NCBI RefSeq assembly: GCF_963676685.1 | Contig: NC_092350.1 | Coordinates: forward strand, 81,840,001-81,904,000 | Length of the DNA stretch: 64,000 nucleotides | Source of the DNA: Mytilus edulis | Taxonomy: Eukaryota | Direction: 5' to 3' | In this document: positions 3 through 54,860 of the stretch, piece after piece | Position numbering within the stretch: position 1 is the first letter of the stretch | How the letters are laid out: each line of letters begins with the position of its first letter | Made by a program: the position numbers and the translations under genes | The notes under the pieces: model-generated | Told to the model about the DNA's origin: nothing | Database searches by the model: none | Seen by the model: the letters and a program-made list of their open reading frames with translations, nothing else

Positions 3-392
3 TACCTTTCCAAAACAGAGGCCGATCCTGGACACCATCATACCATAATCTTTGATTCTATCCTTACAAATTCTGGAAATGGCTACAATAATCATACTGG
101 GGCATTTATTGCTCCAGAAAAGGGACTGTATGTTTTTGCTTTTACCGTCGCTGGGGTCGCAGGCAGCAGAATGCCAGTTCAGTTGGTAGTAAACACTAAT
201 ATTATTGGAGCCACTACTGCTGATAGTCTATCAGATACTCCGACATCAACAGCTTCAAGCGTTGTCATAATTTATTTGAACCAATGTGATACATGTTTTC
301 TAAGAACGCCACCAAATACCGACTGGATTGTTGGAAGTTTGTATAGCCATGTTGATTGGTCTAGATCGTCGTTTTCTGGCTGGAAACTATAA
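3..392 (+). CDS. C1q-domain protein paralog 1, terminal exon (5' partial, runs off window)
   Basis: Frame is open from base 3: YLSKTEADPGHHHTIIFDSILTNSGNGYNNHTGAFIAPEKGLYVFAFTV...SSFSGWKL*. It has the gC1q hallmarks (FD..N.G..Y...G.F..P..G.Y.F; FSGW.L). Confidence 0.92.
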   Translation, partial: YLSKTEADPGHHHTIIFDSILTNSGNGYNNHTGAFIAPEKGLYVFAFTVAGVAGSRMPVQLVVNTNIIGATTADSLSDTPTSTASSVVIIYLNQCDTCFLRTPPNTDWIVGSLYSHVDWSRSSFSGWKL

Positions 393-4110: not shown

Positions 4111-4310
4111 ATTTAGACCGAAATAGAAGATTACTGGTGTCCGGGACTAACGGTGATTCATTACCAATTATCGCATTTCACGCATACCTTTCCAAAACAG
4201 AGATCGACCCGGGACACCATCATACCATAATCTTTGATTCTGTTCTTGCAAATTCCGGGAACGGCTATAGCAATAACACCGGAGCATTCACTGCTCCGTT
4301 AGGGGGAATG
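4111..4310 (+). pseudogene. C1qDC paralog 2, exon 2, 5' half (interrupted by insertion)
   Basis: Acceptor ttttcag|AT in phase 1 gives DLDRNRRLLVSGTNGDSLPIIAFHAYLSKTEIDPGHHH...FTAPLGGM, after which the insertion begins. Confidence 0.9.
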
Positions 4311-5053
4311 TATGGTGGCCGGTTAAGGCCATTTCGCGTTTTCGCGTTTTCGCGTTTTCGCCCATCATATTATATAGGGCGAAAACGCGAAAACGCGAAA
4401 TCGCGAAGTCGAAAACGCGAAAACGCGAAGTCGAAAACGCGAAAACGCGAAAACGCGAAGTCGAAAACGCGAAAACGCGAAGTCGAAAACGCGAAAACGC
4501 GAAATATTTTTTCTTTCCGATTTCGCGTTTTCGACTTCGCGTTTTCGCGTTTTCGACTTCGCGTTTTCGCGTTTTCGCGTTTTCGACTTCGCGATTTCGC
4601 GTTTTCGCCTTTTCGCGTTTTCGCCTTTTCGCGTTTTCGCGATTTCGCGTTTTCGCGTTTTCGCGTTTTCGCGATTTCGCGTTTTCGCGATTTCGCGTTT
4701 TCGCGTTTTCGCGTTTTCGCGATTTCGCGTTTTCGCGTTTTCGCGTTTTCGCGATTTCGTGTTTTCGCGTTTTCGCGTTTTCGCGATTTCGCGTTTTCGC
4801 CTTTTCGCGATTTCGTGTTTTATATACCAATACATATTCTTAGTATTTGACTTTATTTCATAATCTATTTTGTTCAATTCAATATTTTATCATAAATATT
4901 TGTTGTTTTTTAAGGTGTTTCGGTTAAGGTTTAACTACCAAGGCTTTTCCTCATCAGGTATCCCAAGCCTCTAACTAATAAAATAATCAGTTTCAAAGTA
5001 AAGTTCAAAGCATCCATACGCATAGAATTTAAAAATTCTGCATACCGGGATAC
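4311..5053 (-). repeat. Left terminal inverted repeat (743 bp) with (TTTTCGCG)n-type arrays
   Basis: Reverse complement of 6012-6706 apart from 48 bp of extra 8-mer units and a few substitutions. Confidence 0.95.
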
Positions 5054-5060
5054 GACACCT
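4913..5060 (-). ncRNA. Type III hammerhead ribozyme, predicted cleavage GUC| between 5054 and 5053
   Basis: Minus strand: AGGUG-UC|GUAUCCC-(82 nt)-GGGAUAC-CUGAUGA-G...GUUAA acc UUAAC-C-GAAA-CACCU. Stem I is 7 bp, stem III is 6 bp and the core is intact. Loop I AGGCUU is complementary to AAGCCU in the stem II bulge. Confidence 0.82.
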
Positions 5061-5162
5061 GGTAACTTTGTATTGATGTATTGTATTCTAAATTAAATCA
5101 GTTTATGATTTGATATAACCATTGTCTTTTATGTTGTGATTTATCCTATAACTTGGTTTATC

Positions 5163-5510
5163 CTATAACTTGGAGGATGTAAGTAGATCCTTCAAGTTTT
5201 TGTGTCTTTTATATGCTATGATCGGAGGTTTTGGAAACATGGTTTTTGTGCTATCATTTTGTTCAATTAGGTGCCAATGTTTTTTAATTGCTTTATTTAG
5301 TCCATTGAAGGAAGGATTAAATTTGGTGGCTAAAACAAATGGAGGCATTGCTCTTTTGTTTTTAAGCTTGTACCTTAGACAATCTTTTCTTTCCTTATGA
5401 AGTGCATTTGTTATAATGGGGTTGATATCTTTTTCCGAGTATCCCCTTTGGAGAAGTTTTGTTTTAAAAGTTTCAATTTCTTTTAGTGTATCTTTTATGC
5501 ATTTTTCTAC
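5163..5510 (-). pseudogene. Penelope-like RT C-terminal (thumb/linker) fragment ending without GIY-YIG
   Basis: Open frame VEKCIKDTLKEIETFKTKLLQRGYSEKDI...PFVLATKFNP...IKKHWHLI...FPKPPIIAYKRHKNLKDLLTSSKL*. The L..RGY and P.IAY+R.KNL+D.L motifs are typical of PLE RTs. Confidence 0.8.
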
Positions 5511-5773
5511 CTAGTTCGTAATTGTTTAATGTATTTTACATCAGGACTGGGAATAAATTTTAATCCCTTTGCAAGAACTAATATTTCATAGTTTGTGAGA
5601 TTCTCACGTGAAAACACTTCTATATAGTTTAAAGCTTTTTTTACATTTTCATGAAAGTGTTTTGTGCGTTTAAGATGGCCTTTGTTATTATTATGTATAC
5701 GGAGTTTACTTTTGTATTTTATTAATCGTTTTTTCTTATCCCTTTTTCTGAGAGATCGTTTTCTATTACTCAT
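5507..5773 (-). pseudogene. Penelope-like ORF N-terminal fragment
   Basis: Basic N-terminus followed by NLTNYEILVLAKGLKFIP, the L+..E..VL.KGL.F.P motif of PLE N-termini. The RT core is deleted between this and the C-terminal fragment. Confidence 0.78.
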
Positions 5774-5835
5774 AGTAATTTATTTGTATAAATTTGTTTT
5801 GTGACAAAACTATTTTGTTTGTTTGTATAATTATT

Positions 5836-5940
5836 TCAACTCTAATTGAGAGATGAAATGAATATATATGAACTTCAACTCTATTTGAGAGATGAAATGT
5901 ATTTTATTAATTCTACTCTATTTGAGAGATGAATTGATTT
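5836..5940. repeat. Three ~38-40-bp direct repeats upstream of the RT start
   Basis: tcaactctaattgagagatgaaatg / tcaactctatttgagagatgaaatg / tctactctatttgagagatgaattg. Confidence 0.85.
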
Positions 5941-6011
5941 GTATTTTGTTTAAATCTATTTCAAAAATTATACATTGTATATGTAAACTCTGTTGAAGTG
6001 TTTGTTCACTT

Positions 6012-6706
6012 GTATCCCGGTATGCAGAATTTTTAAATTCTGTGCGTATGGATGCTTTGAACTTTACTTTGAAACTGATTATTTTATTAGTTAGAGGCTT
6101 GGGATACCTGATGAGGAAAAGCCTTGGTAGTTAAACCTTAACCGAAACACCTTAAAAAACAACAAATATTTATGATAAAATATTGAATTGAACAAAATAG
6201 ATTATGAAATAAAGTCAAATACTAAGAATATGTATTGGTATATAAAACACGAAATCGCGAAAAGGCGAAAAGGCGAAAACGCGAAAACGCGAAATCGCGA
6301 AAACGCGAAAACGCGAAAACGCGAAATCGCGAAAACGCGAAATCGCGAAAACGCGAAATCGCGAAAACGCGAAATCGCGAAAACGCGAAAAGGCGAAAAC
6401 GCGAAAAGGCGAAAACGCGAAATCGCGAAGTCGAAAACGCGAAAACGCGAAAAGGCGAAGTCGAAAACGCGAAAACGCGAAGTCGAAAACGCGAAATCGG
6501 AAAGAAAAAATATTTCGCGTTTTCGCGTTTTCGACTTCGCGTTTTCGCGTTTTCGACTTCGCGTTTTCGCGTTTTCGCGTTTTCGACTTCGCGTTTTCGC
6601 GTTTTCGACTTCGCGATTTCGCGTTTTCGCGTTTTCGCCCTATATAATATGATGGGCGAAAACGCGAAAACGCGAAAACGCGAAATGGCCTTAACCGGCC
6701 ACCATA
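6012..6706 (+). repeat. Right terminal inverted repeat (695 bp), starting at the ribozyme cleavage position
   Basis: Starts with GTATCCC, the first bases 3' of the GUC site. It contains CTGATGA...GAAACACCT but lacks the upstream AGGTGTC strand. Confidence 0.95.
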
Positions 6707-6712
6707 GTAATG

Positions 6713-6973
6713 TATGTTTTTGCTTTTACTGTTGTTGGGTACCAAGGTACCCGAATGCCAGTTCAGCTGGTTGTAAACAGTAACATTGTTGGAGCTACTG
6801 CTGGTGATAGTTTATCGAGTACTTTGTACCCATCATCTTCAACCGTAGTGGTTATTCATCTTAACCAAAATGATGCATGCTTTCTAAGGACGACAACAAC
6901 TACCGGTTGGAATGTTGGTAATTTGTATAGCAGTGATTGGTCTAGATCATCATTTTCTGCATGGAAGCTTTGA
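6713..6973 (+). pseudogene. C1qDC paralog 2, exon 2, 3' half
   Basis: YVFAFTVVGYQGTRMPVQLVVNSN...SSFSAWKL*, with AATAAA at 6995-7000. Confidence 0.9.
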
Positions 6974-7484: not shown

Positions 7485-7705
7485 CAATAGTTATCAAAGG
7501 TATCAGGGTTATAATTTAATAAACCAGACGAACGTTTCGTTTACATAAGACTTATCAGTGACGCTTTGATCAAAATAGTTACAAAGCCAAAGAAGTACAA
7601 AGTTGAAGAGCATTAAGAACCCAAAGTTCCAAAAAGTTGTACCAAATAAGGCTAAGGTAATATAAATGCCTGGGATAAGAAAGTCCTTAGTTTTTCGAAA
7701 AATTA
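7485..7705 (-). repeat. Degenerate retrozyme-like hammerhead repeat
   Basis: Minus strand gcgtca CTGATAA GTC ttatgta AAC GAAAC GTTC GTC tgg. Flanks match the copies at 24280 and 26460. Confidence 0.75.
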
Positions 7706-8514: not shown

Positions 8515-9516
8515 GTAAGGCAGATATTGGTATTTTTGAAAAGGATCCTGCAGTTAATAAGTTAAATAATTTTTGAAACTACAACAAAGTTACCAAGTTA
8601 TACAGTATAACATATATATATTGCTTTGTTTAAGATAAAAGCAACATATGAATTTCAATGTCCGTTCGAAGTGCTTTTCAGGGTGACCTTCAGACGGAAC
8701 ACTTAAAGCCGAATTGTTGAAAGCAAAATATATAAAAACGATCAATTGAAGACCTTTGTAACCAAAAAAGAACACCTTTATTTTTTTAAGACGAACCATG
8801 CGAAAGGGAGTTAAACCCTTAATTTCTAACCATTTCAAAAATGTCAACGGAAATATTAAAAAGGTTTGTTATAAATCATATCATTACCGAAGTGTTAACT
8901 TCAAGAATGGTGATTCCCTTGGGAGTTGATAATCCTACAGCAGCGGGATCGACCTAATGCTGTAAAAAATGTAAAAACACGCTATAAATGTCATGTGTCC
9001 GAAGCGCTTTTCTGGATTCACCTTCATCGGTAAACGAATATTTGAATATGTGTACGAACCAACACATTTGAAGAGCAATTTACCAAAAATCCTTCTGAGC
9101 TGAATTGTATCTGAGGGAGGTGAAATCTTAGTTTCTATAAAAATTTCAATATTTATTAACTGACAATTTTAGACGGGTGTTTAATAGATCATGTCAGCCC
9201 CGAAGTATAAACTACTTAGGTATCGACTAAGTGCTGTACAAATTCAAATAACACGTTGTAAAGTTCATGCGTTCGAACCGCTTTTCTATAGGTACTTTTA
9301 TATACAGTTATAAACATATAGTTTTATTTGTAAACATGAATTCATCTACCATTTTTTGGCATATTTGATTGGCACATTAGTAAATTATGTCTCTACATTT
9401 TGATGACATGTTCGAGTTCATCCATTGCGAATTTATAAGAAGCTTGATAGTTTAATCTATTTAAAAATTAAACTCACATCTAAAACAGTAGACTTCATTG
9501 CTTTTTTTCATTTCAG

Positions 9517-9977
9517 CATTAAGAAGGCAAGATCGAATGTTAATTTCTAGTCCAGTTGTCGACGCATTACAGAAGATCGCATTTTACGCATACCTTTCAC
9601 ACGGTGAGGTTGACCCAGGGCATCACCATATCATTGTTTTCGATAATGAACTTACTAATTCCGGAAATGGATACAACAAATATACAGGAACGTTTTTGGT
9701 CCCAATTGAAGGGCTTTACGTTTTTTCTTATACCATTGTTGTACAGCGGGGACATCAAATGCCGACAGAACTAGTGGTAAATGGTAATGCTATTGGTGCT
9801 GTTGCAGCTGATAGTTATTCAGATTCCCATTACCCAGCTGCATCAACTACACTTGTTGTTAGTTTGAAAAAAGGCGATGCTTGCTTTATTCGAACTTCAA
9901 CATTCCAGGCTTATGACATTGGGGATCTGTACAGCAGTGTTTGGTCTAGAACATGCTTTTCTGGTTGGAAATTATAA
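9517..9977 (+). CDS. C1qDC paralog 3, exon 2 (gC1q); spliced product 295 aa, apparently intact
   Basis: Acceptor tttcag|CA in phase 1. IAFYAYLSHGEVDPGHHH...CFSGWKL*. The exons total 427+461=888 nt, and AATAAA overlaps the stop. Confidence 0.9.
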
Positions 9978-23091: not shown

Positions 23092-24312
23092 ATTTGAAAT
23101 GATAAAGACGCGGAAAATGCCAAAGGACATTAATGCTTATAAATCGAGGAAAAATTTATCAACGACATGGTAAAAATTAAAAAGATCTAAAGAAAAACAA
23201 CAGTATACAAAACATGATATAGAAATAGCAACACGAACAATTTGAGAAGATCTAAGGTTCTCTGGAAGAGAAGTAAACATGCAATTAGTTTTAAAAAGTC
23301 ACCTTTACCGCGTTAATAAGGCTGATTTTGTAAAACATGTCTATCAGTTACATGTCTGTTTTATCTATTTCAATGTAGGTAAAACAAATAATTATGTAGG
23401 TGAAATTTTAACCTTTTTTTTTTTTTACCCAGTTTTGGTTACTTTGATAGATGTACAGTCAGATCTGCTACTAGTGAAAGGAGATGAGACAAAAAGAATT
23501 ATAAAATCATTTAATTTACCAATAAATACGTAAAAGCTGGTGAAAAAAGAAAAGGCTCGTTTTATTTTGAATCTAAAACGTTCCATAATCAATCTCATAT
23601 ATTTGAAAAAATATATAAAAAAAAACCACCCACATTCAATAACGTAGTTTCTGATAACAATGAAAACTGAAGCTAAGGAAGTAAGAACTAAAGATCTTCA
23701 TAGACTTATTCAAGCTAGATGTTTAATAAAACACAATATTCGTTTGATTCTGTTCCTTGTTATCGGGTTAACTGTGTTCCCCTCAATACAAAGTTTCGGT
23801 TTTGAGTAGCAATGTGTTGTCCCGTAAACTTATTGAGTATACAGATTTGAATCGACATCATATAACAAAACAATTTCACAATGTTTCATGGTATGTTGAA
23901 TGTATGTTTCCGTGAGGTTTGAAAGTGAAAACAGATAATGCAGAACGTTTGATACTTGATCCAATGATGTGTATAAATATATGGATGACGACGAAAAGAC
24001 GTAGCAATCTTTTTGATAAACCGTAAGAAGGCGCTGCATAAAAAACCTCGATAAATAGAGGATAGTCCATATAAGTCGTATGCTAATTATTAGCATGCTC
24101 TTATATATAAATACAAAATATATTACTTTTCCGGAGTATCAACGATAATCCTCATCTTTTGATGTAGTTAAGTATTTAAATTTTTACGGTGTGTTTGGTA
24201 TATTTTACTATTTTGGTCGTTTTCGAAATTGTATGGCAATGTCAGTTTGTTTTCGACTTTTTGTGTTTTATTAGTAAATAGCTATCAAAGGTACCAGGAT
24301 TATAATCATAAT

Positions 24313-24357
24313 ACACCAGACGCGCGTTTCGTCTATACAAAACTCATCAGTGACGCT
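24313..24357 (-). ncRNA. Minimal type I hammerhead ribozyme in a retrozyme-like repeat (~24275-24460)
   Basis: Minus strand gcguca-CUGAUGA-GUU uuguaua GAC-GAAA-C GCGC G-UC|uggugu. The core is intact and stem III carries the palindrome ACGCGCGU. Confidence 0.8.
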
Positions 24358-25094
24358 CAAATCAAAATAGTTATAAAGCCAAACAAGAAAAAAGTAGAAG
24401 AGCATTGAGGACCCAAAATTCCAAAAAGTTGTGCCAAGTAATCTATGCCTGGGATAAGAAATAAAATATCTCGTCAGTACCTTTCGTCTTTCTTTATCAA
24501 ATGACAATAGGACTTGAACATAACAAACATGGAAGACTATAGGTTCAATAAATGATACAGGATAACTATTATGGTTTTGAAATCTGTCTGAGTGCTATGT
24601 GTTTTGTTGTTTTAGAATTATAATATGGCAAGGAACAATAACAACTGCGTGTTAAAAATCATTTATTATGCATTTCAATTTAAATTGTCAAAACCGCTGT
24701 TATAAAGATATCGAAGGAACACCTCCTTAATGTAATCTGATAAATTTACTAACAAAGTTTACAAACTAATCATTTACATCTACAAGGACATCGACCGATT
24801 TAAAGAATGTCCAAATTTTAGGACAGTTTACTCACGATAACCAATCGATAGAAAAATTGCCATTCGTTCGAAAACTAAAATCAGAAACAGTTTTTTTAAA
24901 CATGGGCTTTAAATTGAATCAAATAATATAAAATAATTAAAGTTTTTGCAAATTGTAAAAAAAGCAAAACATGTTGGCACCTTTTATGGTGTTTGGTCAT
25001 TGTAATTAGGATACTTTGTCCCTGCTTTTCCATTTAAAATGATTTCAAATAGAATCAAATATTAACCAATAATGGATGGTCTCATCCATAAATA

Positions 25095-25170
25095 ATCAAA
25101 GGTACCAGGATTATAATTTAGTACGCCAAACGCACGTTTCGTCTACATAAGACTCATCAGTGATGCCTAA
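25095..25170 (-). repeat. Retrozyme-like hammerhead fragment
   Basis: gcatca CTGATGA GTC ttatgta GAC GAAAC GTGC GTT tggcgt. Confidence 0.75.
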
Positions 25171-25655: not shown

Positions 25656-26486
25656 GGACAGTAAATTTTATATACGAATAAACCTCAAATCGCACTCCAA
25701 AAAAAATGCCATTAAAAACAAAAGAAAATATATAAACTTTGAAAGAAACTGATGTTGTTGCGTTTGATTCTTTTGATTTGTTTTTAATCATTTGTTTCAG
25801 TTGCTTTGTTTTTATTGGGTATTATCGGATGTATTTTTATTCTTTTCTTTGCTCCTTTACCTAAAATATTGTTTTATGTCTCATAAGTCTGAATATAAAA
25901 GTCGTTTATACTGTAGTCAAGTTTATATTACAAATGTTAACGCCTATCGCCTACATAAGAACCAAAAACGTTTAAATCATCTATTTAAATTAAGATTATA
26001 TATGATTAATTTTGCAAAACTGAATGACGTATCATTACCATTGGATTTAAATAGTTTATATTAGTATTATTAACTATACATTACAAAATAACGCTTGTGC
26101 CATATAGTTGACTAAATGACTGTTTCACTAAATTTTATACCATGGTCACCAGTGGAAAACCTTTGTTTTAATATACGTATCCAGCTGTTAGTACCTGCAA
26201 GTACTGTTACATCGATACGTTGAGGGGATGTCCGATTATTGTGTGTACTTAGTGTTGATCTATAGCTATTGAGTCAAACTATTTCTGACTGATTGCCAAT
26301 CACTAAGATACAGAGTATTTTTCAAAGTTTATATTATGTTGTGATAAGGGCTCACACAATGATTGCAACTTTTTCAATGGTTGTCTTCGATACCTTTTTG
26401 TTGTATTGTTATTCGTTTAATTTCAAATATAAATAGACCAGTTTATATCTTATAATAGTTATCAAAAGTACCAGGATTATGATTTA

Positions 26487-26534
26487 GAACGCCAGATGCG
26501 CGTTTCGTCTACACAAGACTCATCAGTGGCGTTC
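26487..26534 (-). ncRNA. Minimal type I hammerhead in a retrozyme-like repeat (~26455-26700)
   Basis: gaacgcca-CUGAUGA-GUC uugugua GAC-GAAAC GCGC AUC|uggcguuc. Stem I is a perfect 8 bp and stem III has a C-A mismatch. Confidence 0.75.
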
Positions 26535-28999
26535 ATATCAAAATATTCATAAAGCCAAAGTTCAAAGTTGAAGAGCATTGAACATCCAAAATTCCAAAAA
26601 GTTGTGCCAAATACGGCTAAGGTAATCTATGTCTGGGATAAGAAAATCCTTAGTTTTCGAAAAATTGAAAGTTTTGTAAACAGGAAATTTATAAAAAAAA
26701 AAAAAAAAAGACCTACTGAAACGTATAATGTGAAAAACGCAAGTTTGAATGATTTGCACATGTAAAAAAAATTAATCTTTACTCTTATAATATTCGAGTG
26801 CATGATTTGATGAAGTATTCTTTTAAAACATAACTTAACATAGTCAATTTTGTGATCAATGACTGACAGAGGTTTAGACGTGTATATGAGATGCTATTTA
26901 AAAAAATAACATAATGAAATTTGAACAAATTTGTCTTGGTATCATGTGTTATGATTGTATGAATATACATAAAATACTACAAGACAGGGTACCAATGATC
27001 TATACGCGCAACCTTAAAGAAAAACTAACAAATATATAAATGAATTATAAGCTATTAGATGTATGCATGACAATGTTAAAATTAAAAAGATAAAGATAAC
27101 ATTCAAAACGACAAATTCAACAAAAAAGAATTCATGACTTTAAAAATACCGTTTAAATTGTAAAGAAATCTACTTGAACCATACATTTCTGGAGAAAAAA
27201 AAGGTCCAACCACCATTATCTTGGTAATGATTATACGCTCAAACTTGATAAAAGTAAATATAATAGTTCATATTCTTTATGTGAGAAAAAAAATTTTGGT
27301 TATACAAAATACAGAGATGAAACATAAAAATAACTCGACAATAATGATATTGGTCTCCTTTCTTTGAAACCAGGTTAAATCCACCGTATTCATAAGGAAA
27401 TGTCTGTACAAGGTCATAAACACGACATTTATTGTCCATTCGTTTGATGTGTTTGAGCTTTGATTTTGCCATTTGATAAGGGACTTTTCGTTTTGAATTT
27501 TCCTCGGAATTCTTGTGATTTTACCTTTTTCCTCAACCTCTTTAATAAAGGAACCAACTGTTTTCTATCATTTGGTGTTGATGGTTAGTAGCAAAGAGAT
27601 TACCTCGAAGGTTCGTGATTGTCGGTACAATGATTATCTGAGTTGAGCTTCGAAAAAGTTTTTACTGCTTTGTTTTTTTGTCTAGCATGCGGCATTTCGA
27701 GTTTCAATAAAAATAAGGAATTCAAAGATTTTTATATGTTATCGTCTTTGGAATACATGTCGTGATTTAAGCAGAACTTATAGCAGCCATTGCATTTTTT
27801 GGTCGAATCGTGATTCTTGTTTGCATTTGTCATACACACTGAATAACCTTCAATTCAACTTCATATAAGGAACTTTAATTTACTCGAATAAAAAGTATAA
27901 GTGCCTTGTTATTTAAATTACATGACTTGTTTATGTCTTGCCATGCAAAAATGTTTTATTTCAAGGTCCTAATTATCATAATTTTTAATCTGTTCGAGTT
28001 GTAAGACATACTTCATTAAAAAAAAAGTGACATCCTTACATGATATTTTTAACATAACGCTTTGCGAAAAATTGAATAATGTTGTCCCTGTTTTCCGTAT
28101 TTGGAAGTTGTATATTTCAGTAAAATGCCATATGGGTCAGTAGAGAGTCTCACACTCAATAAGTATGCGGTGATCAGAGATCGAGTATGTTAAATCTACA
28201 TTTTTCTTGCTGTCACTTACCTTTTTATAAGAGAATAATATGACGAAGTTTGTGTTGAGCGGCCTTAAGCATGTTTTGTGCACTTGAGTAAATTTCTAGT
28301 TTAGTGCGTTTCCTTTTTCGTTTAACCGTAGTTTTTTTCCCTGTTTTGTTTTGTATTTTCTGCCGTTCTCTGTCTTTCTTCGAATTGTGTATTTTGATAT
28401 TTCTCCTCAATTCGTGTATTTTTCTTTTATCAATTCATGTAATACTTTGTTTCTTTTTTATTGGTTTGATCTCCAATTTTCAATCTTTTCTATGGGTATG
28501 TTTTTGCTAACTTGTTCTATTTTGCTAAGTTTTTATAAATTTTTAGTTTTTATTTCTTAAATTACAACGTACAACACAATTTGATAGTTTGATAAAAGTA
28601 TATTAGCAACGTATCATGCACATAAAATGATTGCATAATTCTTTATATTTTCAAGGCTCTGAATTGAAAGAAGTCATGCTAAAATAGGTGAAATATATCT
28701 GAACATGCATTTTTTTTCTTTTTTGAAAAGAATCTTAATACTATTTCAAATTACCAGTCTATTTTTCTACCGTTTAATAAATTCCATGGTTTGCTTATCA
28801 AATAAGAAAAGTGAACTACGTCTACATTAATATATTGTTTTTTGTAGAGACTCATATGTATACACGTTAGTGTTGTAAATCTCAAATCATTGTGCATGGC
28901 TTTTTTGTTTATAAGCATTGAAGATATTCTTTCTAACAAGCTTTTTTTCTTGTCTTAAATTATTTTCAATGTCATAAATTGTATTAATGAAATAGCATA

Positions 29000-34492: not shown

Positions 34493-34874
34493 AAATAAAC
34501 TCATCATATATATACCAGAACTGAAATTATGTATTTGCGCCAGACGTGCGTTTCGTCTAAAAAGACTCATTTGTGACGCTCGAATCATAGAAAGTTCAAT
34601 GGCTAAATCATGTACGAAGTTGAAGAGTGATTGGGAACCCAAAAAATTCCTAAAAGTTTTGCCAAATGCAACCAAGGTAACCTATTACTGTCAGAGGTAG
34701 AAAAGTCTTAGTTTTTTTCAAAAACTCAAAGTTTTGTAAACGGTTCATTTATAATAATAACCATATTAATGATAATGCATGTCAAGACAAACGTGCTGAT
34801 TACTGCGGTGATTATACCCCCGGGGAATTAAACTCCACCAGCAATGACATCGACACAGTGGTTTTAAATAAACT
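34493..34874 (-). mobile_element. Apparently full-length retrozyme-like monomer (~375 bp) with degenerate hammerhead
   Basis: Begins and ends with aaataaact (terminal redundancy). The core reads gcgtca CAAATGA GTC..GAC GAAAC GCAC GTC tggcgc. Confidence 0.7.
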
Positions 34875-41699: not shown

Positions 41700-41860
41700 A
41701 GAAATTTTGTATTTGCGCCAGACACGCGTATCGTCTACAAGAGATTCACCAGTGACGCTCGAATAAAAAAAGTGAAAAAGCAAAATAAAGAACGAAGTTG
41801 AAAAACATTGAGGACCAAAATGTCCTAAAATCTTTACCAAATACAGCTAAGGTTATCTAA
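41700..41860 (-). repeat. Degenerate retrozyme-like copy
   Basis: gcgccagacacgcgtatcgtctacaagagattcaccagtgacgctcgaa plus the shared flank. Confidence 0.7.
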
Positions 41861-44574: not shown

Positions 44575-46381
44575 CACCGTGTAGAACGCCACATGCGGGG
44601 TGTCGGCTATGTTTGACATGGGGTGGCAATTTTGAAGCGACGAAAAAGTAAGAAGGTAAGTTCAAGCATCAAAATTTCTTATTTCTAGAACTCTCAGTAC
44701 CATATAATGTATTGCACGGAAGGAACCACAATATAATCTATTTCCTGAAAGCAGAAGCAGTCGTTTTCAGTGCTCAGTTTTCTCAAACACCTCGCCCTAG
44801 TTTTCCGTGTTGCAGATTTTGAGGCTTTATATGCAAATTTCGGTATAAAAAACTACTTTACACAGCCATCCCCCGTATCATTTATATAGAATTGTATTCC
44901 TCTCATTGACTTATACCAAATACCAGTTTCTTAGTTAAAATTAATTGGTTTTAAAACTGTTATTCATCAAAATATAAAGTGTCGCTCGGGGTGTCAGATT
45001 TTGCGTCGCAAGGGGTAGAGGCTTGTCATGAAAAAATACATATTTGCTTGTAAATTAGTCTTCATATGATACATTTTATTTCAAACACATCTACTTTACC
45101 ATGACAAAACAAGGATTTTTCATTTTGCCTGTTTTTGGTCTAATAAAATATATGCTTTTGATTTCATTCACATCTACTTTACCATGACAAAATAAGGGTT
45201 TTTCATTTTTGCCTGCTTTTGGTCTTACAAAACATGTGCTTTTGATTTCATTCATAGTAAAAAAAATGGCTTAAAATATTTAGTTTTCAAGCTGGTAAAC
45301 GATTTCTTTTCCTTTTCAGTCACAATCATGGTAAAAAAAAGTCAAGGCTATGGCTCAATAAACCAAAACATCACAAAATAGTCCTCAATATAAGATATGC
45401 CCAAAGCCTCCACCAGCCAAAATGCATCATAGTTCATCAGCAGGTTCATCTAAAAAGCACTCGTGCACGCCGCAAAAATCCATTACTCCTAAAAGAATTA
45501 GAACACTCTCTCCAATGAAACACTCTCCAGCATCTTTTTCAGCGAATGACAACACAACTTCAAGTAATCCTGAAGACGATGATACTACAATTGTCAATGA
45601 GAAAACAACGACTTGTACACAATATACAACGGAACAGGTTTACAAGAACAAATGATTCAAGACAGTTATTTCGTTCGTAATCGCCCAGCTAGAACTATCC
45701 GTTTTCTGTTACACATCTATCATATCATATCTACTTTGAAGGTTTACTCTGACTATATACATATCTCTAAACGAACCGGAATTGAATAAAATTTGAAAAA
45801 TATGATGTAACCTGTGTTTTTCTGGGTTGCATTTCTGTTACATTTATGTTTCTATTTTTGTAGGTGTGTTTGAATTAAAAAGTATCAGATAGAGATCGAT
45901 TTATAAGAAAATGTATTCTTTTTTTTATGACAAGCCTCTACCCCTTGCGACGCAAAATCTGACACCCCGGGTGACACTTTATATTTTGATGAATAGCAGT
46001 TTTAAAACCAATTAATTTTAACTAAGAAACTGGTATTTGGTATAAGTCAATGAGAGGAATACAATTCTATATAAATGATACGGATGGTAGCTGTGTAAAG
46101 TAGTTTTTTATACCGAAATTTGCATATAAAGCCTCAAAATCTGCGACATGGAAAACTAGGGCGAGGTGTTTGAGAAAACTGAGCACTGAAAACGACTGCT
46201 TCTGCTTTCAGGAAATAGATTATGTTGCGGTTCCTTCCGTGCAATACATTATATGGTACTGAGAGTTCTAGAAATAAGAAATTTTGATGCTTGAACTTAC
46301 CTTCTTACTTTTTCGTCGCTTCAAAATTGCCACCCCATGTCAAACATAGCCGACACCCCGCAAGTGGCGTTCTACACGGTG
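44575..46381. mobile_element. Non-autonomous DNA transposon with 455-bp TIRs, CACCGTG termini and an apparent 5-bp TSD (Transib/CMC-like)
   Basis: 44575-45029 is a near-perfect reverse complement of 45927-46381, with ATATA on both flanks. The interior has a ~85-bp tandem duplication and a decayed Ser/Thr-rich ORF (45422-45655). Confidence 0.88.
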
Positions 46382-51234: not shown

Positions 51235-51462
51235 TTTACAAAATTTACAAAATACTAAGGCTTTTCTACCTCAGGCATAGATTACCTTAGCTGGATTTTG
51301 CAAAATTTTTAGTAATTCTGGTCCTCAATGCTCTTCAACTTCGTACTTTATTTGGCCTTTTTAACTTTTTTGGATTCGAGCGTCACTGGTGAGTCTTTTG
51401 TAGACGAAACGCGCGTCTGCCGTATATACAAAATTTAGTCATGGTATCTATGATGAGTTTAT
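51235..51462 (+). repeat. Retrozyme-like copy with a point-mutated hammerhead core (51378-51423)
   Basis: gcgtca CTGGTGA GTC ttttgta GAC GAAAC GCGC GTC tgccgt. Confidence 0.8.
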
Positions 51463-53899: not shown

Positions 53900-54860
53900 A
53901 GATAAAGGTAACAGTAGTATACCGCTGTTCAAAACTCATAAATCCATGGACAAAAAACAAAATCGGGGTAACAAACTAAAACTGACGGAAACGCATTAAA
54001 TATAAGAGGAGAACAATGACACACCATTAAAATGTAACACACACAGAAACGGACTAAGCATTAGACAAAATCCTATGAGAATAACAAATATAACATCAAA
54101 ACTAAATAGATGAACTTGGGATAGATAAGTACCGTGACACGTGCACGTTTTATAGTAATGTGAATTCACACTCAAAAATAAGAGAAAACAAACGACACAA
54201 CGGAAACACAACGTTAAAATGTTACACACACAGAAACGAACTATAATATAACAATGGCCATATTCCTGACTTGGTACAGGACATTTTTAAAGGAAAAAAT
54301 GGTGGGTTGAACCTGGTTTTGTGGCATGCCAAAACTCCCTCTTTTATGGCCATGTGAAATATAACATTAAAATGACAACACAACATTACAGGACTGCAAT
54401 ATAAATAAATAGGAGAACACAATGACAAAAAACACACAAATAGCTAACAAAAGGCAACAAATTTAAAATGTCAATACGCCAGAGTGCATTTTCTCCACAC
54501 AAGACTTACCAGTGACGCCAAGATACAAAAGTTTGAAAGCCGAAACAAGTACAAAGTTGAACAGCATCGAGGACCAAAAGTTCAAAAAAGTTGTGCCAAA
54601 AACGGCCAGGGTTTTCTGTTAATAGGTACCAGAACATCCCTATTATTTAGAATAACTTATACTTTTGCAAAAAATTTATAAAATGACTATACAAAAGATA
54701 TATGATAAAACTGAAGTATTAACTAATTACAGGAAACAACCGAAATACATTACATAACCCGACAAAATGTACAAAAAATAGACACATCCGAATAAGTTAA
54801 AACCTCAACGCCAAGTGACGTCATACTTGAAGTTGTAAAAAATGACAATAAAATGACGTC
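53900..54860. mobile_element. ~1-kb repeat containing a degenerate hammerhead/retrozyme segment
   Basis: The first ~600 bp are colinear with 30020-30455 and continue into retrozyme-like sequence at 54470-54720. The right end is approximate. Confidence 0.6.

What the first reader, a model, noticed from the sequence alone, without database searches (positions are those of the whole stretch)
4913..6018. The TIR begins exactly at the hammerhead cleavage site
Seen: a complete type III hammerhead lies ~100 nt downstream of the RT stop on the RT strand, with predicted cleavage GUC|GUAUCCC at 5054/5053. Inverted-repeat identity ends precisely at 5053. The right arm starts at 6012 with GTATCCC and lacks the AGGTGTC strand, so the TIR equals the 3' self-cleavage product to the base. 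Inference: the cleaved RNA is the template from which the opposite TIR is reverse-transcribed, so the TIRs are built through RNA. A 5-bp hairpin (AAGTG-tttgtt-CACTT, 5996-6011) abuts the right junction and could mark a priming or template-switch point.
Basis: partly seen in the sequence, partly recalled or inferred. Interest (0 to 1): 0.92.

Follow-up and report, generated by a model that had tools for sequence, protein, structure and literature searches.

The report
Retroelement's inverted arm ends at ribozyme cut
A young, defective Penelope-like retroelement sits inside a mussel-type C1q immune gene with a second, flipped copy of its tail, and that flipped copy stops exactly at the base where the element's own hammerhead ribozyme is predicted to cut. 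This single case suggests the ribozyme cuts the RNA before it is copied into DNA.

Summary
The inverted-repeat arms are 4314-5053 and 6012-6703, about 99.5% identical apart from one 48-nt indel. Identity stops to the base at 5053/6012. On the minus strand a hammerhead motif has its cleavage nucleotide C17 at 5054. Its core is complete, with a 7-bp stem I and a 6-bp stem III. No such motif appeared in 300 shuffled windows. Stem II is poor, Rfam finds no hammerhead, and catalysis is untested.

The element is not a DNA transposon with captured cargo. It is one retro-insertion of a Penelope-like element (PLE) into a C1q exon, with a 7-bp target duplication. It consists of a sense copy with the reverse transcriptase (RT) core deleted, plus an upstream inverted copy of the tail. 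That architecture is already published for PLEs. The parent family is about 645 aa long and ends before the GIY-YIG endonuclease, so it is endonuclease-less. Three of its relatives, L001, L004 and L011, carry hammerheads right after the stop codon.

The new point is that the inverted copy is truncated exactly at the ribozyme cut. That fits cDNA run-off on self-cleaved RNA. It rests on one locus, with a chance estimate of roughly 0.001-0.02. The scan has other unchecked notes on the same stretch and on similar hammerhead elements elsewhere in this genome.

The parts
4307..4313 (.). Left copy of the target-site duplication, AATGTAT. It forms the end of the 5' half of the interrupted C1q exon.
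   Evidence: the intact paralog at window 100-180 shows the uninterrupted site ..TGTAT|GTTTTT; 4137-4313 matches C1q profile positions 1-47.
4314..5053 (-). Sense tail of the element (left arm), equal to the predicted 3' hammerhead cleavage product. It runs from GUAUCCC to the 3' terminus ..GGCCUUAACCGGCCACC and includes nested palindromic 8-mer (CGCGAAAA) arrays at about 4330-4822.
4913..5060 (-). Discontinuous type III hammerhead motif: stem III 5060-5055 with 4918-4913, C17 at 5054, stem I 5053-5047 with 4964-4958, loop I 5046-4965 (82 nt), CUGAUGA 4957-4951, stem II region 4950-4922, GAA 4921-4919.
   Evidence: No Rfam hit.
5054..6011 (-). Unique body of the sense copy: 3' UTR 5054-5162, ORF remnants, and 5' UTR 5774-6011 with three ~38-nt tandem repeats at 5826-5939.
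   Evidence: (family D15).
5163..5501 (-). C-terminal remnant of the Penelope-like RT (112 aa plus stop), corresponding to residues ~540-651 of 653-aa relatives. The ORF of the whole family ends here, before any GIY-YIG endonuclease.
5507..5773 (-). N-terminal remnant (88-aa ORF with the KGLKFIPSP motif), corresponding to residues ~1-85 of relatives. About 455 residues between the two remnants, including the RT core, are deleted.
5996..6011 (.). 5-bp hairpin AAGTG/CACTT at the 5' end of the sense copy, next to the head-to-head junction.
   Evidence: Background frequency is 1.1% per position.
6012..6703 (+). Inverted copy of the tail (right arm). It starts at GTATCCC, carries the hammerhead core but has no stem III 5' strand and no C17, and ends at the same terminal base (..GGCCACC) as the left arm.
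6704..6708 (.). Five extra bases, ATAGT, between the right arm and the target duplication. They are either filler or a slightly more distal RT start on the RNA. In the alternative reading the element is 4311-6706 with an imperfect 6-bp duplication, GGAATG/GTAATG.
6709..6715 (.). Right copy of the target-site duplication, AATGTAT. The 3' half of the C1q exon follows, to about 6973.
   Evidence: 6710-6973 matches C1q profile positions 46-123.

Best explanation
This is one recent retro-insertion of a non-autonomous Penelope-like element (PLE) into a C1q-domain exon. It was built head-to-head from two cDNAs.

Shown:
- The sense unit (6011 down to 4314, minus strand) is 5' UTR, RT remnant with the catalytic core deleted, 109-nt spacer, hammerhead, then a 740-nt tail.
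- The right arm (6012-6703) is a reverse-complement copy of the tail only.
- Both outer ends are the same element 3' terminus.
- The composite is flanked by one 7-bp duplication.
- The inverted copy ends exactly at the predicted hammerhead cleavage site.

Inferred:
- The element's transcript partly self-cleaves after C17. That gives a full-length RNA and a tail RNA beginning 5'-GUAUCCC. Both keep the 3' end that the RT uses.
- At the target, the 3'-OH of each DNA strand primed reverse transcription of one RNA. The two 3'-OH ends came either from a staggered cut made in trans by an endonuclease-bearing PLE or from the two ends of a break.
- The cDNA on the tail RNA ran off at the ribozyme-made 5' end. 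The other cDNA ran to the 5' end of the full-length RNA at 6011.
- The two cDNA ends were joined by template jumping or end joining.

On this reading the 'TIR' is a by-product of double-ended priming, and its inner edge is a footprint of ribozyme cleavage in vivo.
For: - The boundary is exact. Identity runs to 5053/6012, with no similarity in the 22 bases inside the boundary. C17 is at 5054.
- The hammerhead is not a chance motif: 0 hits in 300 shuffles. It spans the boundary, so the tail and the body are contiguous parts of one retroelement.
- Relatives of the same RT family have hammerheads 25-35 nt after the stop codon (L001, L004, L011).
- The ORF remnants are homologous to the N- and C-termini of ~645-aa PLE-type RTs.
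- It was a single insertion event. There is one duplication, AATGTAT, and an intact paralogous empty site. The C1q profile is split at positions 47/46.
- Both arms end at the same terminal base.
- The arms are about 99.5% identical, as expected if both were made at insertion.
- Published support: an inverted 5'-truncated copy upstream of PLE insertions is typical (PMC8557442). A purified PLE protein cuts and extends both target strands and is predicted to be a dimer (PMC11167929).
- Coincidence estimate, my own arithmetic: a random truncation point along the 1698-nt unit falls on this base with p of about 0.0006, or about 0.002 allowing +/-1 nt. Allowing for 5-10 landmarks a reader might have noticed gives about 0.005-0.02.
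Against: - There is only one locus. No independent copy was available.
- Stem II is only 2 G-C pairs plus a possible interrupted helix.
- The ribozyme fold is 7 kcal/mol above the minimum-energy fold.
- Rfam finds no hammerhead even at E<=10.
- In the one PLE studied biochemically, hammerhead mutants did not affect insertion in vitro, and no RNA-seq reads began or ended at the cut site (PMC11167929).
- The parent family has no endonuclease, so the source of the staggered cut is unknown.
- The sense copy spans the cleavage site. It therefore needs an uncleaved RNA or a jump across the cut.
- Another hammerhead-bearing dispersed repeat in this window has boundaries that are not at its cleavage site.
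Confidence: 0.55

Rival explanations
1. The architecture is the same PLE double-primed composite, but the truncation at 5053 has nothing to do with RNA cleavage. The inverted cDNA simply stopped or switched template there, either by random 5' truncation or by an RT pause at the ribozyme's three-way junction. The hammerhead may be inactive.
For: - 5' truncation at arbitrary points is the rule for PLE insertions (PMC8557442).
- Stem II is weak and the active fold is not the minimum-energy fold.
- There is no Rfam hit.
- Hammerhead cleavage was dispensable, and left no RNA ends, in Anolis.
- The evidence is a single locus.
Against: - An exact hit on one base in about 1700 is unlikely by chance.
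- An RT moving 3' to 5' would be expected to pause on entering a helix, not after fully copying stem I and exactly before C17.
- The motif itself is highly non-random.
Confidence: 0.2
2. The 2.4-kb unit is a foldback or TIR-type DNA element that moves as DNA, using a transposase supplied in trans. This is the scan's other reading: IS3EU-like ends enclosing PLE cargo. The 6011/6012 junction arose once in an ancestor and is inherited, so it says nothing about each insertion.
For: - The terminal inverted repeats are long and near-perfect, with internal tandem sub-repeats as in foldback elements.
- A short duplication of 6-7 bp flanks the unit. In one reading the IR extends to 4311/6706 with a 6-bp duplication, GGAATG/GTAATG.
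- The parent RT family has no endonuclease.
- Another long-TIR DNA element lies at 44575-46381 in the same window.
Against: - The arm sequence is retroelement 3' UTR. The hammerhead pairs across the arm boundary, and three relatives (L001, L004, L011) carry the ribozyme after the ORF.
- No transposase remnant is present.
- In the perfect-duplication reading, 5 extra bases separate the right arm from the duplication. That is usual for reverse transcription and unusual for cut-and-paste.
- Even if true, this rival still needs an RNA-level explanation for how the arm first came to start at the cleavage site.
Confidence: 0.17
3. The inverted duplication was made at the DNA level after a simple insertion, for example by fold-back priming at a break or by replication template switching.
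For: A 5-bp hairpin abuts the junction. The arms are nearly identical.
Against: - The right arm ends at exactly the same terminal base as the left arm and is followed by the target duplication. A later duplication would not recreate that.
- There is no microhomology between 6007-6011 and the sequence next to 5054.
- The 958 nt between the arms is far larger than a fold-back spacer.
Confidence: 0.05

Closest known systems
Penelope-like element insertions with an upstream inverted 5'-truncated copy (Evgen'ev and Arkhipova 2005; Craig et al. 2021, PMC8557442, fig. 2)
   Same: - A sense copy is preceded by an inverted, 5'-truncated copy, so inverted repeats flank the whole unit.
- There is a hammerhead in the non-coding terminal region.
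- There are a few extra bases at one end only, a very short analogue of the published 30-40 bp 'tail'.
- The RT is of the PLE type.
   Different: - The truncation point of the inverted copy is the ribozyme cleavage site, which the papers read here do not report.
- The parent ORF has no GIY-YIG endonuclease.
- The hammerhead is a discontinuous type III, not the minimal type I dimer form.
- The sense copy is an internal-deletion derivative.
Hammerheads of PLEs (Cervera and De la Pena 2014, PMC4209133; Frangieh et al. 2024, PMC11167929)
   Same: A hammerhead is embedded in the PLE untranslated region. The proposed role is processing of element transcripts. The 2014 paper notes pairs of hammerheads on opposite strands 100-700 bp apart.
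   Different: - The published motifs are minimal type I with almost no helix III and probably act as dimers.
- In Anolis the cut lies 26 nt inside the ORF, cleavage was not needed in vitro, and no RNA ends were seen at the site.
- Here a 6-bp helix III closes the motif, and a genomic junction sits at the cut.
HDV-like ribozymes at the 5' end of R2 and other non-LTR retrotransposons
   Same: A self-cleaving ribozyme sets the 5' end of the RNA template, so the DNA copy's 5' boundary coincides with the cleavage site.
   Different: The ribozyme class and the retroelement class both differ. In those elements the ribozyme defines the 5' end of the full element. Here it would create a sub-genomic tail RNA that becomes the inverted arm.
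L1 twin priming
   Same: Both target strands prime cDNA synthesis, giving an insertion with an inverted segment and a target duplication.
   Different: In L1 the second primer anneals internally on the same RNA, so the inverted part is the element's 5' portion and the junction varies. Here both outer ends are element 3' ends, and the inner end of one cDNA is a defined RNA end.
Discontinuous hammerheads in mammalian Clec2 3' UTRs (Martick et al. 2008, cited in PMC4209133; details from my own knowledge)
   Same: Type III-like topology, with the substrate and enzyme strands separated by a long insertion in the stem I loop.
   Different: Those lie in a host mRNA, not a mobile element, and the insertion is longer. 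No sequence relationship was tested.
Endonuclease-deficient PLEs Athena and Coprina (Gladyshev and Arkhipova 2007, as summarised in PMC8557442)
   Same: The RT ORF has no GIY-YIG domain, and a hammerhead sits next to short tandem repeats near the 3' end.
   Different: Athena and Coprina sit at telomeres and carry reverse-complement telomeric repeats. This element is inside a gene, has a target duplication, and carries non-telomeric CGCGAAAA arrays. Phylogenetic placement was not tested.

Membership tests
Hammerhead ribozyme (type III topology) | Conserved core C3-U4-G5-A6-N7-G8-A9, G12-A13-A14, the A15.1-U16.1 pair, and H17 not G | tested here: met
   CUGAUGA at 4957-4951, GAA at 4921-4919, A15.1 at 4918 paired with U16.1 at 5055, C17 at 5054.
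Hammerhead ribozyme (type III topology) | Helices I and III flank the cleavage site, with the open end at helix III | tested here: met
   Stem I is 7 Watson-Crick bp and stem III is 6. None of 300 shuffled windows contained the motif. Loop I is 82 nt.
Hammerhead ribozyme (type III topology) | A stable helix II starting with G10.1-C11.1 | tested here: inconclusive
   G10.1-C11.1 and G10.2-C11.2 are present, but RNAfold finds no stable helix in the 29-nt segment (-1.9 kcal/mol). A 2+3 bp helix with an A.A internal loop is possible by eye.
Hammerhead ribozyme (type III topology) | Match to the Rfam hammerhead covariance models | tested here: not met
   No hammerhead family is reported at gathering score or at E<=10 on 4200-6800. 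The 82-nt loop I may be the cause.
Hammerhead ribozyme (type III topology) | Self-cleavage 3' of position 17 | not testable with these tools
   This needs an in vitro or in vivo assay. Read data could not be obtained.
Penelope-like element (PLE) | PLE-type reverse transcriptase | tested here: met
   The remnants match the N- and C-termini of 643-653-aa proteins that carry RVT_1 and the motifs P-G-R-P-I-I-S and R-Y-R-D-D-G. The closer relatives come from Mytilus coruscus and Pinctada imbricata. The catalytic core itself is deleted in this copy.
Penelope-like element (PLE) | GIY-YIG endonuclease in the same ORF (canonical EN+ clades) | tested here: not met
   The query maps to the extreme C-terminus of at least ten listed 643-653-aa relatives. 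The consensus of a 13-sequence alignment ends ..LTSSKL. Pfam finds no GIY-YIG in any of the six relatives of 412-688 aa that were scanned (five of them full-length, 643-688 aa), but does find it in the 919-aa relative P0131.
Penelope-like element (PLE) | Hammerhead in the terminal non-coding region | tested here: met
   Window motif. Type I hammerheads lie just after the ORF in L001, L004 and L011, and a minimal type I lies in L002.
Penelope-like element (PLE) | Complex insertion with an upstream inverted 5'-truncated copy or pseudo-LTRs | tested here: met
   The inverted tail copy 6012-6703 lies upstream of the sense copy. No direct pseudo-LTR is present.
TIR or foldback DNA transposon (including the scan's IS3EU-like reading) | Terminal inverted repeats directly flanked by a perfect target duplication | tested here: inconclusive
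   The terminal inverted repeats are present. The duplication is either a perfect 7 bp separated from the right arm by 5 extra bases, or an imperfect 6 bp directly abutting the arms.
TIR or foldback DNA transposon (including the scan's IS3EU-like reading) | A transposase gene, or termini matching a known transposase-bearing family | tested here: not met
   The only coding remnants are PLE RT pieces. No library of transposon termini was available, so similarity of the ends to IS3EU was not tested.
Non-LTR retrozyme | Tandem repeats, each with a type I hammerhead, giving unit-length circular RNAs | tested here: not met
   There is one substrate site only. The second core copy is inverted and lacks the substrate strand. 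There is no tandem unit.

The most novel reading that the evidence does not exclude
Hammerhead self-cleavage in vivo splits the transcript of an endonuclease-less Penelope-like family into a full-length RNA and a tail RNA. The RT then uses both at the two 3' ends of a chromosomal break or staggered cut. This would create retroelements with transposon-like terminal inverted repeats whose inner edges mark the ribozyme cut. If general, it would give PLE hammerheads a concrete job and explain how inverted pseudo-LTRs form.
Probability: 0.3. Interest if true: 0.75.

Novelty: new variant of a known kind. Interest (0 to 1): 0.55.

Why it matters
What hammerheads do in Penelope-like elements is an acknowledged open question. 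PMC8557442 states that their function 'is still unclear'. PMC11167929 found cleavage dispensable in vitro and saw no RNA ends at the cut.

A DNA junction that sits on the cleavage site to the base would be a fossil record of a cleaved RNA having served as an RT template in vivo. It also makes the question testable by a simple genome-wide count of junction positions.

The work also points to an abundant bivalve family of ~645-aa PLE-type RTs without an endonuclease that nonetheless inserts inside genes with target duplications. The canonical endonuclease-dependent model does not cover that case.

Practically, such composites mimic TIR DNA transposons and could be mis-annotated. Here the insertion has disrupted a C1q immune-type gene copy.

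Tried and rejected
- Rfam at gathering score on the whole window and at E<=10 on 4200-6800 gave no ribozyme family. The only hits were spurious miRNA-like matches to the palindromic 8-mer arrays.
The contigs behind the near-identical proteins P0001, P0002 and P0168 could not be read.
- An exact-pattern scan for the 23-nt core segment found nothing in metagenome contigs, genome contigs or viral contigs.
- The search for related loci found nothing in viral contigs or genome contigs.
- The metagenome scan gave 18 loci. They are short, have no inverted repeats, and are only 23-43% identical, so they could not test the boundary.
- The upstream regions of L001-L014 show no inverted hammerhead. The CTGAGGA site in L009 is not a hammerhead.
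- My first loose descriptor (G-U pairs plus one mismatch allowed) was uninformative, with 0.42 hits per shuffled window. I replaced it with a Watson-Crick-only test.
- The Terminon paper could not be read.
- The second large inverted repeat, at 44575-46381, is an unrelated DNA-type element.
- The dispersed ~190-nt hammerhead repeat family in the window has a common 3' end about 45 nt past its cleavage site and not at it. It does not replicate the finding.
- Post-insertion fold-back duplication was rejected: both arms end at the same terminal base next to the duplication.
Full report
**What is there**

The window holds a 2.4-kb insertion with long inverted arms. The repeat finder reports arm pairs that together cover 4311-5053 and 6012-6706. 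A gapped alignment of the reverse-complemented left side against the right side shows one continuous arm pair, 4314-5053 and 6012-6703. It has a single substitution in the 232-nt unique part, three substitutions in the 8-mer arrays and one 48-nt (six-unit) indel. Identity starts abruptly at GTATCCC, and the 22 bases inside the boundary share nothing. Base 6011 is not the complement of 5054, so the boundary is unambiguous.

**The insertion event**

The flanks are the two halves of a C1q-domain exon. Segment 4137-4313 matches C1q profile positions 1-47, and 6710-6973 matches positions 46-123. Intact paralogs lie at 1-347 and about 9500-9977.

The paralog shows the empty site ..TGTAT|GTTTTT. The insertion is flanked by AATGTAT on both sides (4307-4313 and 6709-6715), with five extra bases ATAGT next to the right arm. 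An alternative parsing puts the element at 4311-6706 with an imperfect 6-bp duplication. I cannot choose between the two.

In both readings, both arms end at the same terminal sequence, ..GGCCTTAACCGGCCACC, and the composite went in as one event. The arms differ by about 0.5%, so the event is recent.

**The coding content**

On the minus strand an 88-aa ORF (5773-5510) and a 112-aa open frame (5501-5166, stop at 5163-5165) are all that is left of a protein. Pfam sees nothing in either piece.

The 112-aa piece finds more than 1500 relatives. They include a 98%-identical fragment that retains more upstream RT sequence (P0001), a Mytilus coruscus RT-domain protein (P0004) and Pinctada imbricata proteins.

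In at least ten full-length relatives of 643-653 aa the match lies at the very C-terminus. Their alignment ends ..LTSSKL and carries PLE-type RT motifs. Pfam finds RVT_1 but no GIY-YIG in them. A 919-aa relative does have GIY-YIG.

The 88-aa ORF matches residues about 1-73 of P0007. The window copy is therefore a deletion derivative lacking about 455 residues, including the RT core. Its parent is a Penelope-like family whose ORF stops before the endonuclease.

**The hammerhead**

Reading the minus strand from 5060 to 4913 gives AGGUGU-C|GUAUCCC, then 82 nt, then GGGAUAC-CUGAUGA, then 29 nt, then GAA-ACACCU. All core positions are correct: the A15.1-U16.1 pair, C17 and G10.1-C11.1. Stem I has 7 Watson-Crick pairs and stem III has 6.

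A loose descriptor was uninformative. A strict Watson-Crick descriptor gave no hit in 300 Markov-shuffled windows, even at 4+4 pairs, and exactly one hit in the real window.

Weak points:
- Stem II is not a stable helix.
- The ribozyme fold is about 7 kcal/mol above the minimum-energy fold.
- Rfam reports no hammerhead even at E<=10, plausibly because of the 82-nt loop I.
- Catalysis is untested.

The right arm carries the same core but is preceded by ..CACTT, so it has neither stem III nor C17.

**Relatives**

Eighteen metagenome loci encode relatives. In L001, L004 and L011 a hammerhead begins 25-35 nt after the stop codon. It has type I topology with a long insertion in stem II: stem I of 5-9 bp, stem III of 4-7 bp, and C or U at position 17. 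L002 has a minimal type I motif further downstream.

A ribozyme right after the ORF is therefore a family trait, although the topology differs from the window's. These contigs are short, contain no inverted repeats, and do not allow the boundary test.

**Interpretation**

Stem III pairs across the arm boundary, and three relatives (L001, L004, L011) keep the ribozyme next to the ORF. The left arm and the body are therefore one contiguous retroelement, and the right arm is a partial inverted copy of it. This argues against the scan's other reading of DNA-transposon ends with captured cargo.

The architecture of a sense copy plus an upstream inverted 5'-truncated copy is described as typical of PLE insertions (PMC8557442). 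A purified PLE protein cuts and extends both target strands and is predicted to dimerise (PMC11167929). 'TIRs built through RNA' is thus consistent with published knowledge rather than new.

What I did not find in the papers read is an inverted copy truncated exactly at the ribozyme cut. A cDNA that copies G1.1 and stops before C17 is what run-off on a 5'-OH cleavage product would give. An RT pausing at structure should stop on entering a helix, not on leaving one.

For a random truncation point along the 1698-nt unit, the chance of hitting this base is about 0.0006.

My best model is that partial self-cleavage yields a full-length RNA and a tail RNA, each primed from one target strand. The two cDNAs then meet head-to-head at 6011|6012.

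The family lacks an endonuclease. The cut may therefore come from an endonuclease-bearing PLE acting in trans, or the two primers may be the two ends of a break. Either is inference.

**Cautions**

- This is one locus.
- In Anolis, hammerhead mutants did not change insertion in vitro, and no RNA-seq reads ended at the cut.
- The sense copy spans the site. It needs an uncleaved template, or a jump across the cut held together by stems I and III.
- If the composite now moves as a unit, identical junctions in other copies would reflect descent rather than repeated events. The census must therefore look for independent junctions.
- A hairpin like the 5-bp one at 5996-6011 ends exactly at 1.1% of positions, so it is a weak after-the-fact coincidence.

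**What could not be done**

- Pattern scans of three collections found no other copy.
- The scan's own notes list related hammerhead and Penelope observations elsewhere in this genome. I used them only as leads.

**Verdict**

This is a known kind of element (a PLE composite insertion) with a new and testable detail, the arm edge at the ribozyme cut. It lies in an apparently endonuclease-less bivalve PLE family.

Noticed in passing
window 4137-4313 and 6709-6973; paralogs at 1-347 and 9498-9977: The element interrupts a C1q-domain exon, splitting the profile at positions 47/46. The window holds at least three C1q-domain gene copies, which supply an intact empty site.
   Followed up: yes
proteins P0007, P0012, P0015, P0024, P0045, P0046, P0075, P0090, P0110, P0154: A large family of 643-653-aa PLE-type RTs ends at ..LTSSKL with no GIY-YIG endonuclease. 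It has many near-intact copies in Pinctada imbricata. The papers I read place endonuclease-less PLEs at telomeres, whereas this family inserts inside genes.
   Followed up: partly
window 24310-24355 (minus strand); copies near 7486-7682, 25089-25166, 26454-26645, 34540-34665, 41718-41843, 51263-51425, 54438-54599: A dispersed ~190-230-nt SINE-like repeat carries a minimal type I hammerhead: CUGAUGA, a 13-nt stem II, GAAAC, and a palindromic helix III GCGCGU. Copies share a 3' end about 45 nt past the cleavage site, and one copy is 5'-truncated just before the core. Rfam did not report it.
   Followed up: partly
window 4330-4822 and 6244-6690: The tails consist largely of CGCGAAAA/TTTTCGCG 8-mer arrays arranged as nested palindromes. 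They give spurious plant-miRNA-like Rfam hits below gathering score. The two arms differ by six units.
   Followed up: partly
window 44575-46381: An unrelated element has 462-bp terminal inverted repeats (97% identical), termini CACCGTGTAGAACGCC.., and AT-rich flanks. It looks like a non-autonomous DNA transposon.
   Followed up: no
L002 3026-3071, 3598-3643, 4698-4743, 5048-5092; L015 823-869: Several Rfam histone 3' UTR stem-loop matches, three of them above gathering score, lie downstream of a distant PLE-type RT in a metagenome contig. Either the element's tail carries repeated histone-type stem-loops or the contig neighbours a histone cluster.
   Followed up: no
L012 1-110 and 6404-6513: The contig ends are identical, so this distant relative (27% identity) is assembled as a 6403-bp circle or tandem unit.
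   Followed up: no
window 5826-5939: Three tandem ~38-nt repeats lie in the element's 5' UTR, each containing the palindrome CTCTAATTGAGAG or a near variant. They may be a promoter or a protein-binding module.
   Followed up: no
window 5130-5165: A 17-nt direct duplication (TTTATCCTATAACTTGG, twice) lies immediately at and after the ORF stop on the plus strand. In the relative P0002 the stop is read through for 20 more residues.
   Followed up: no
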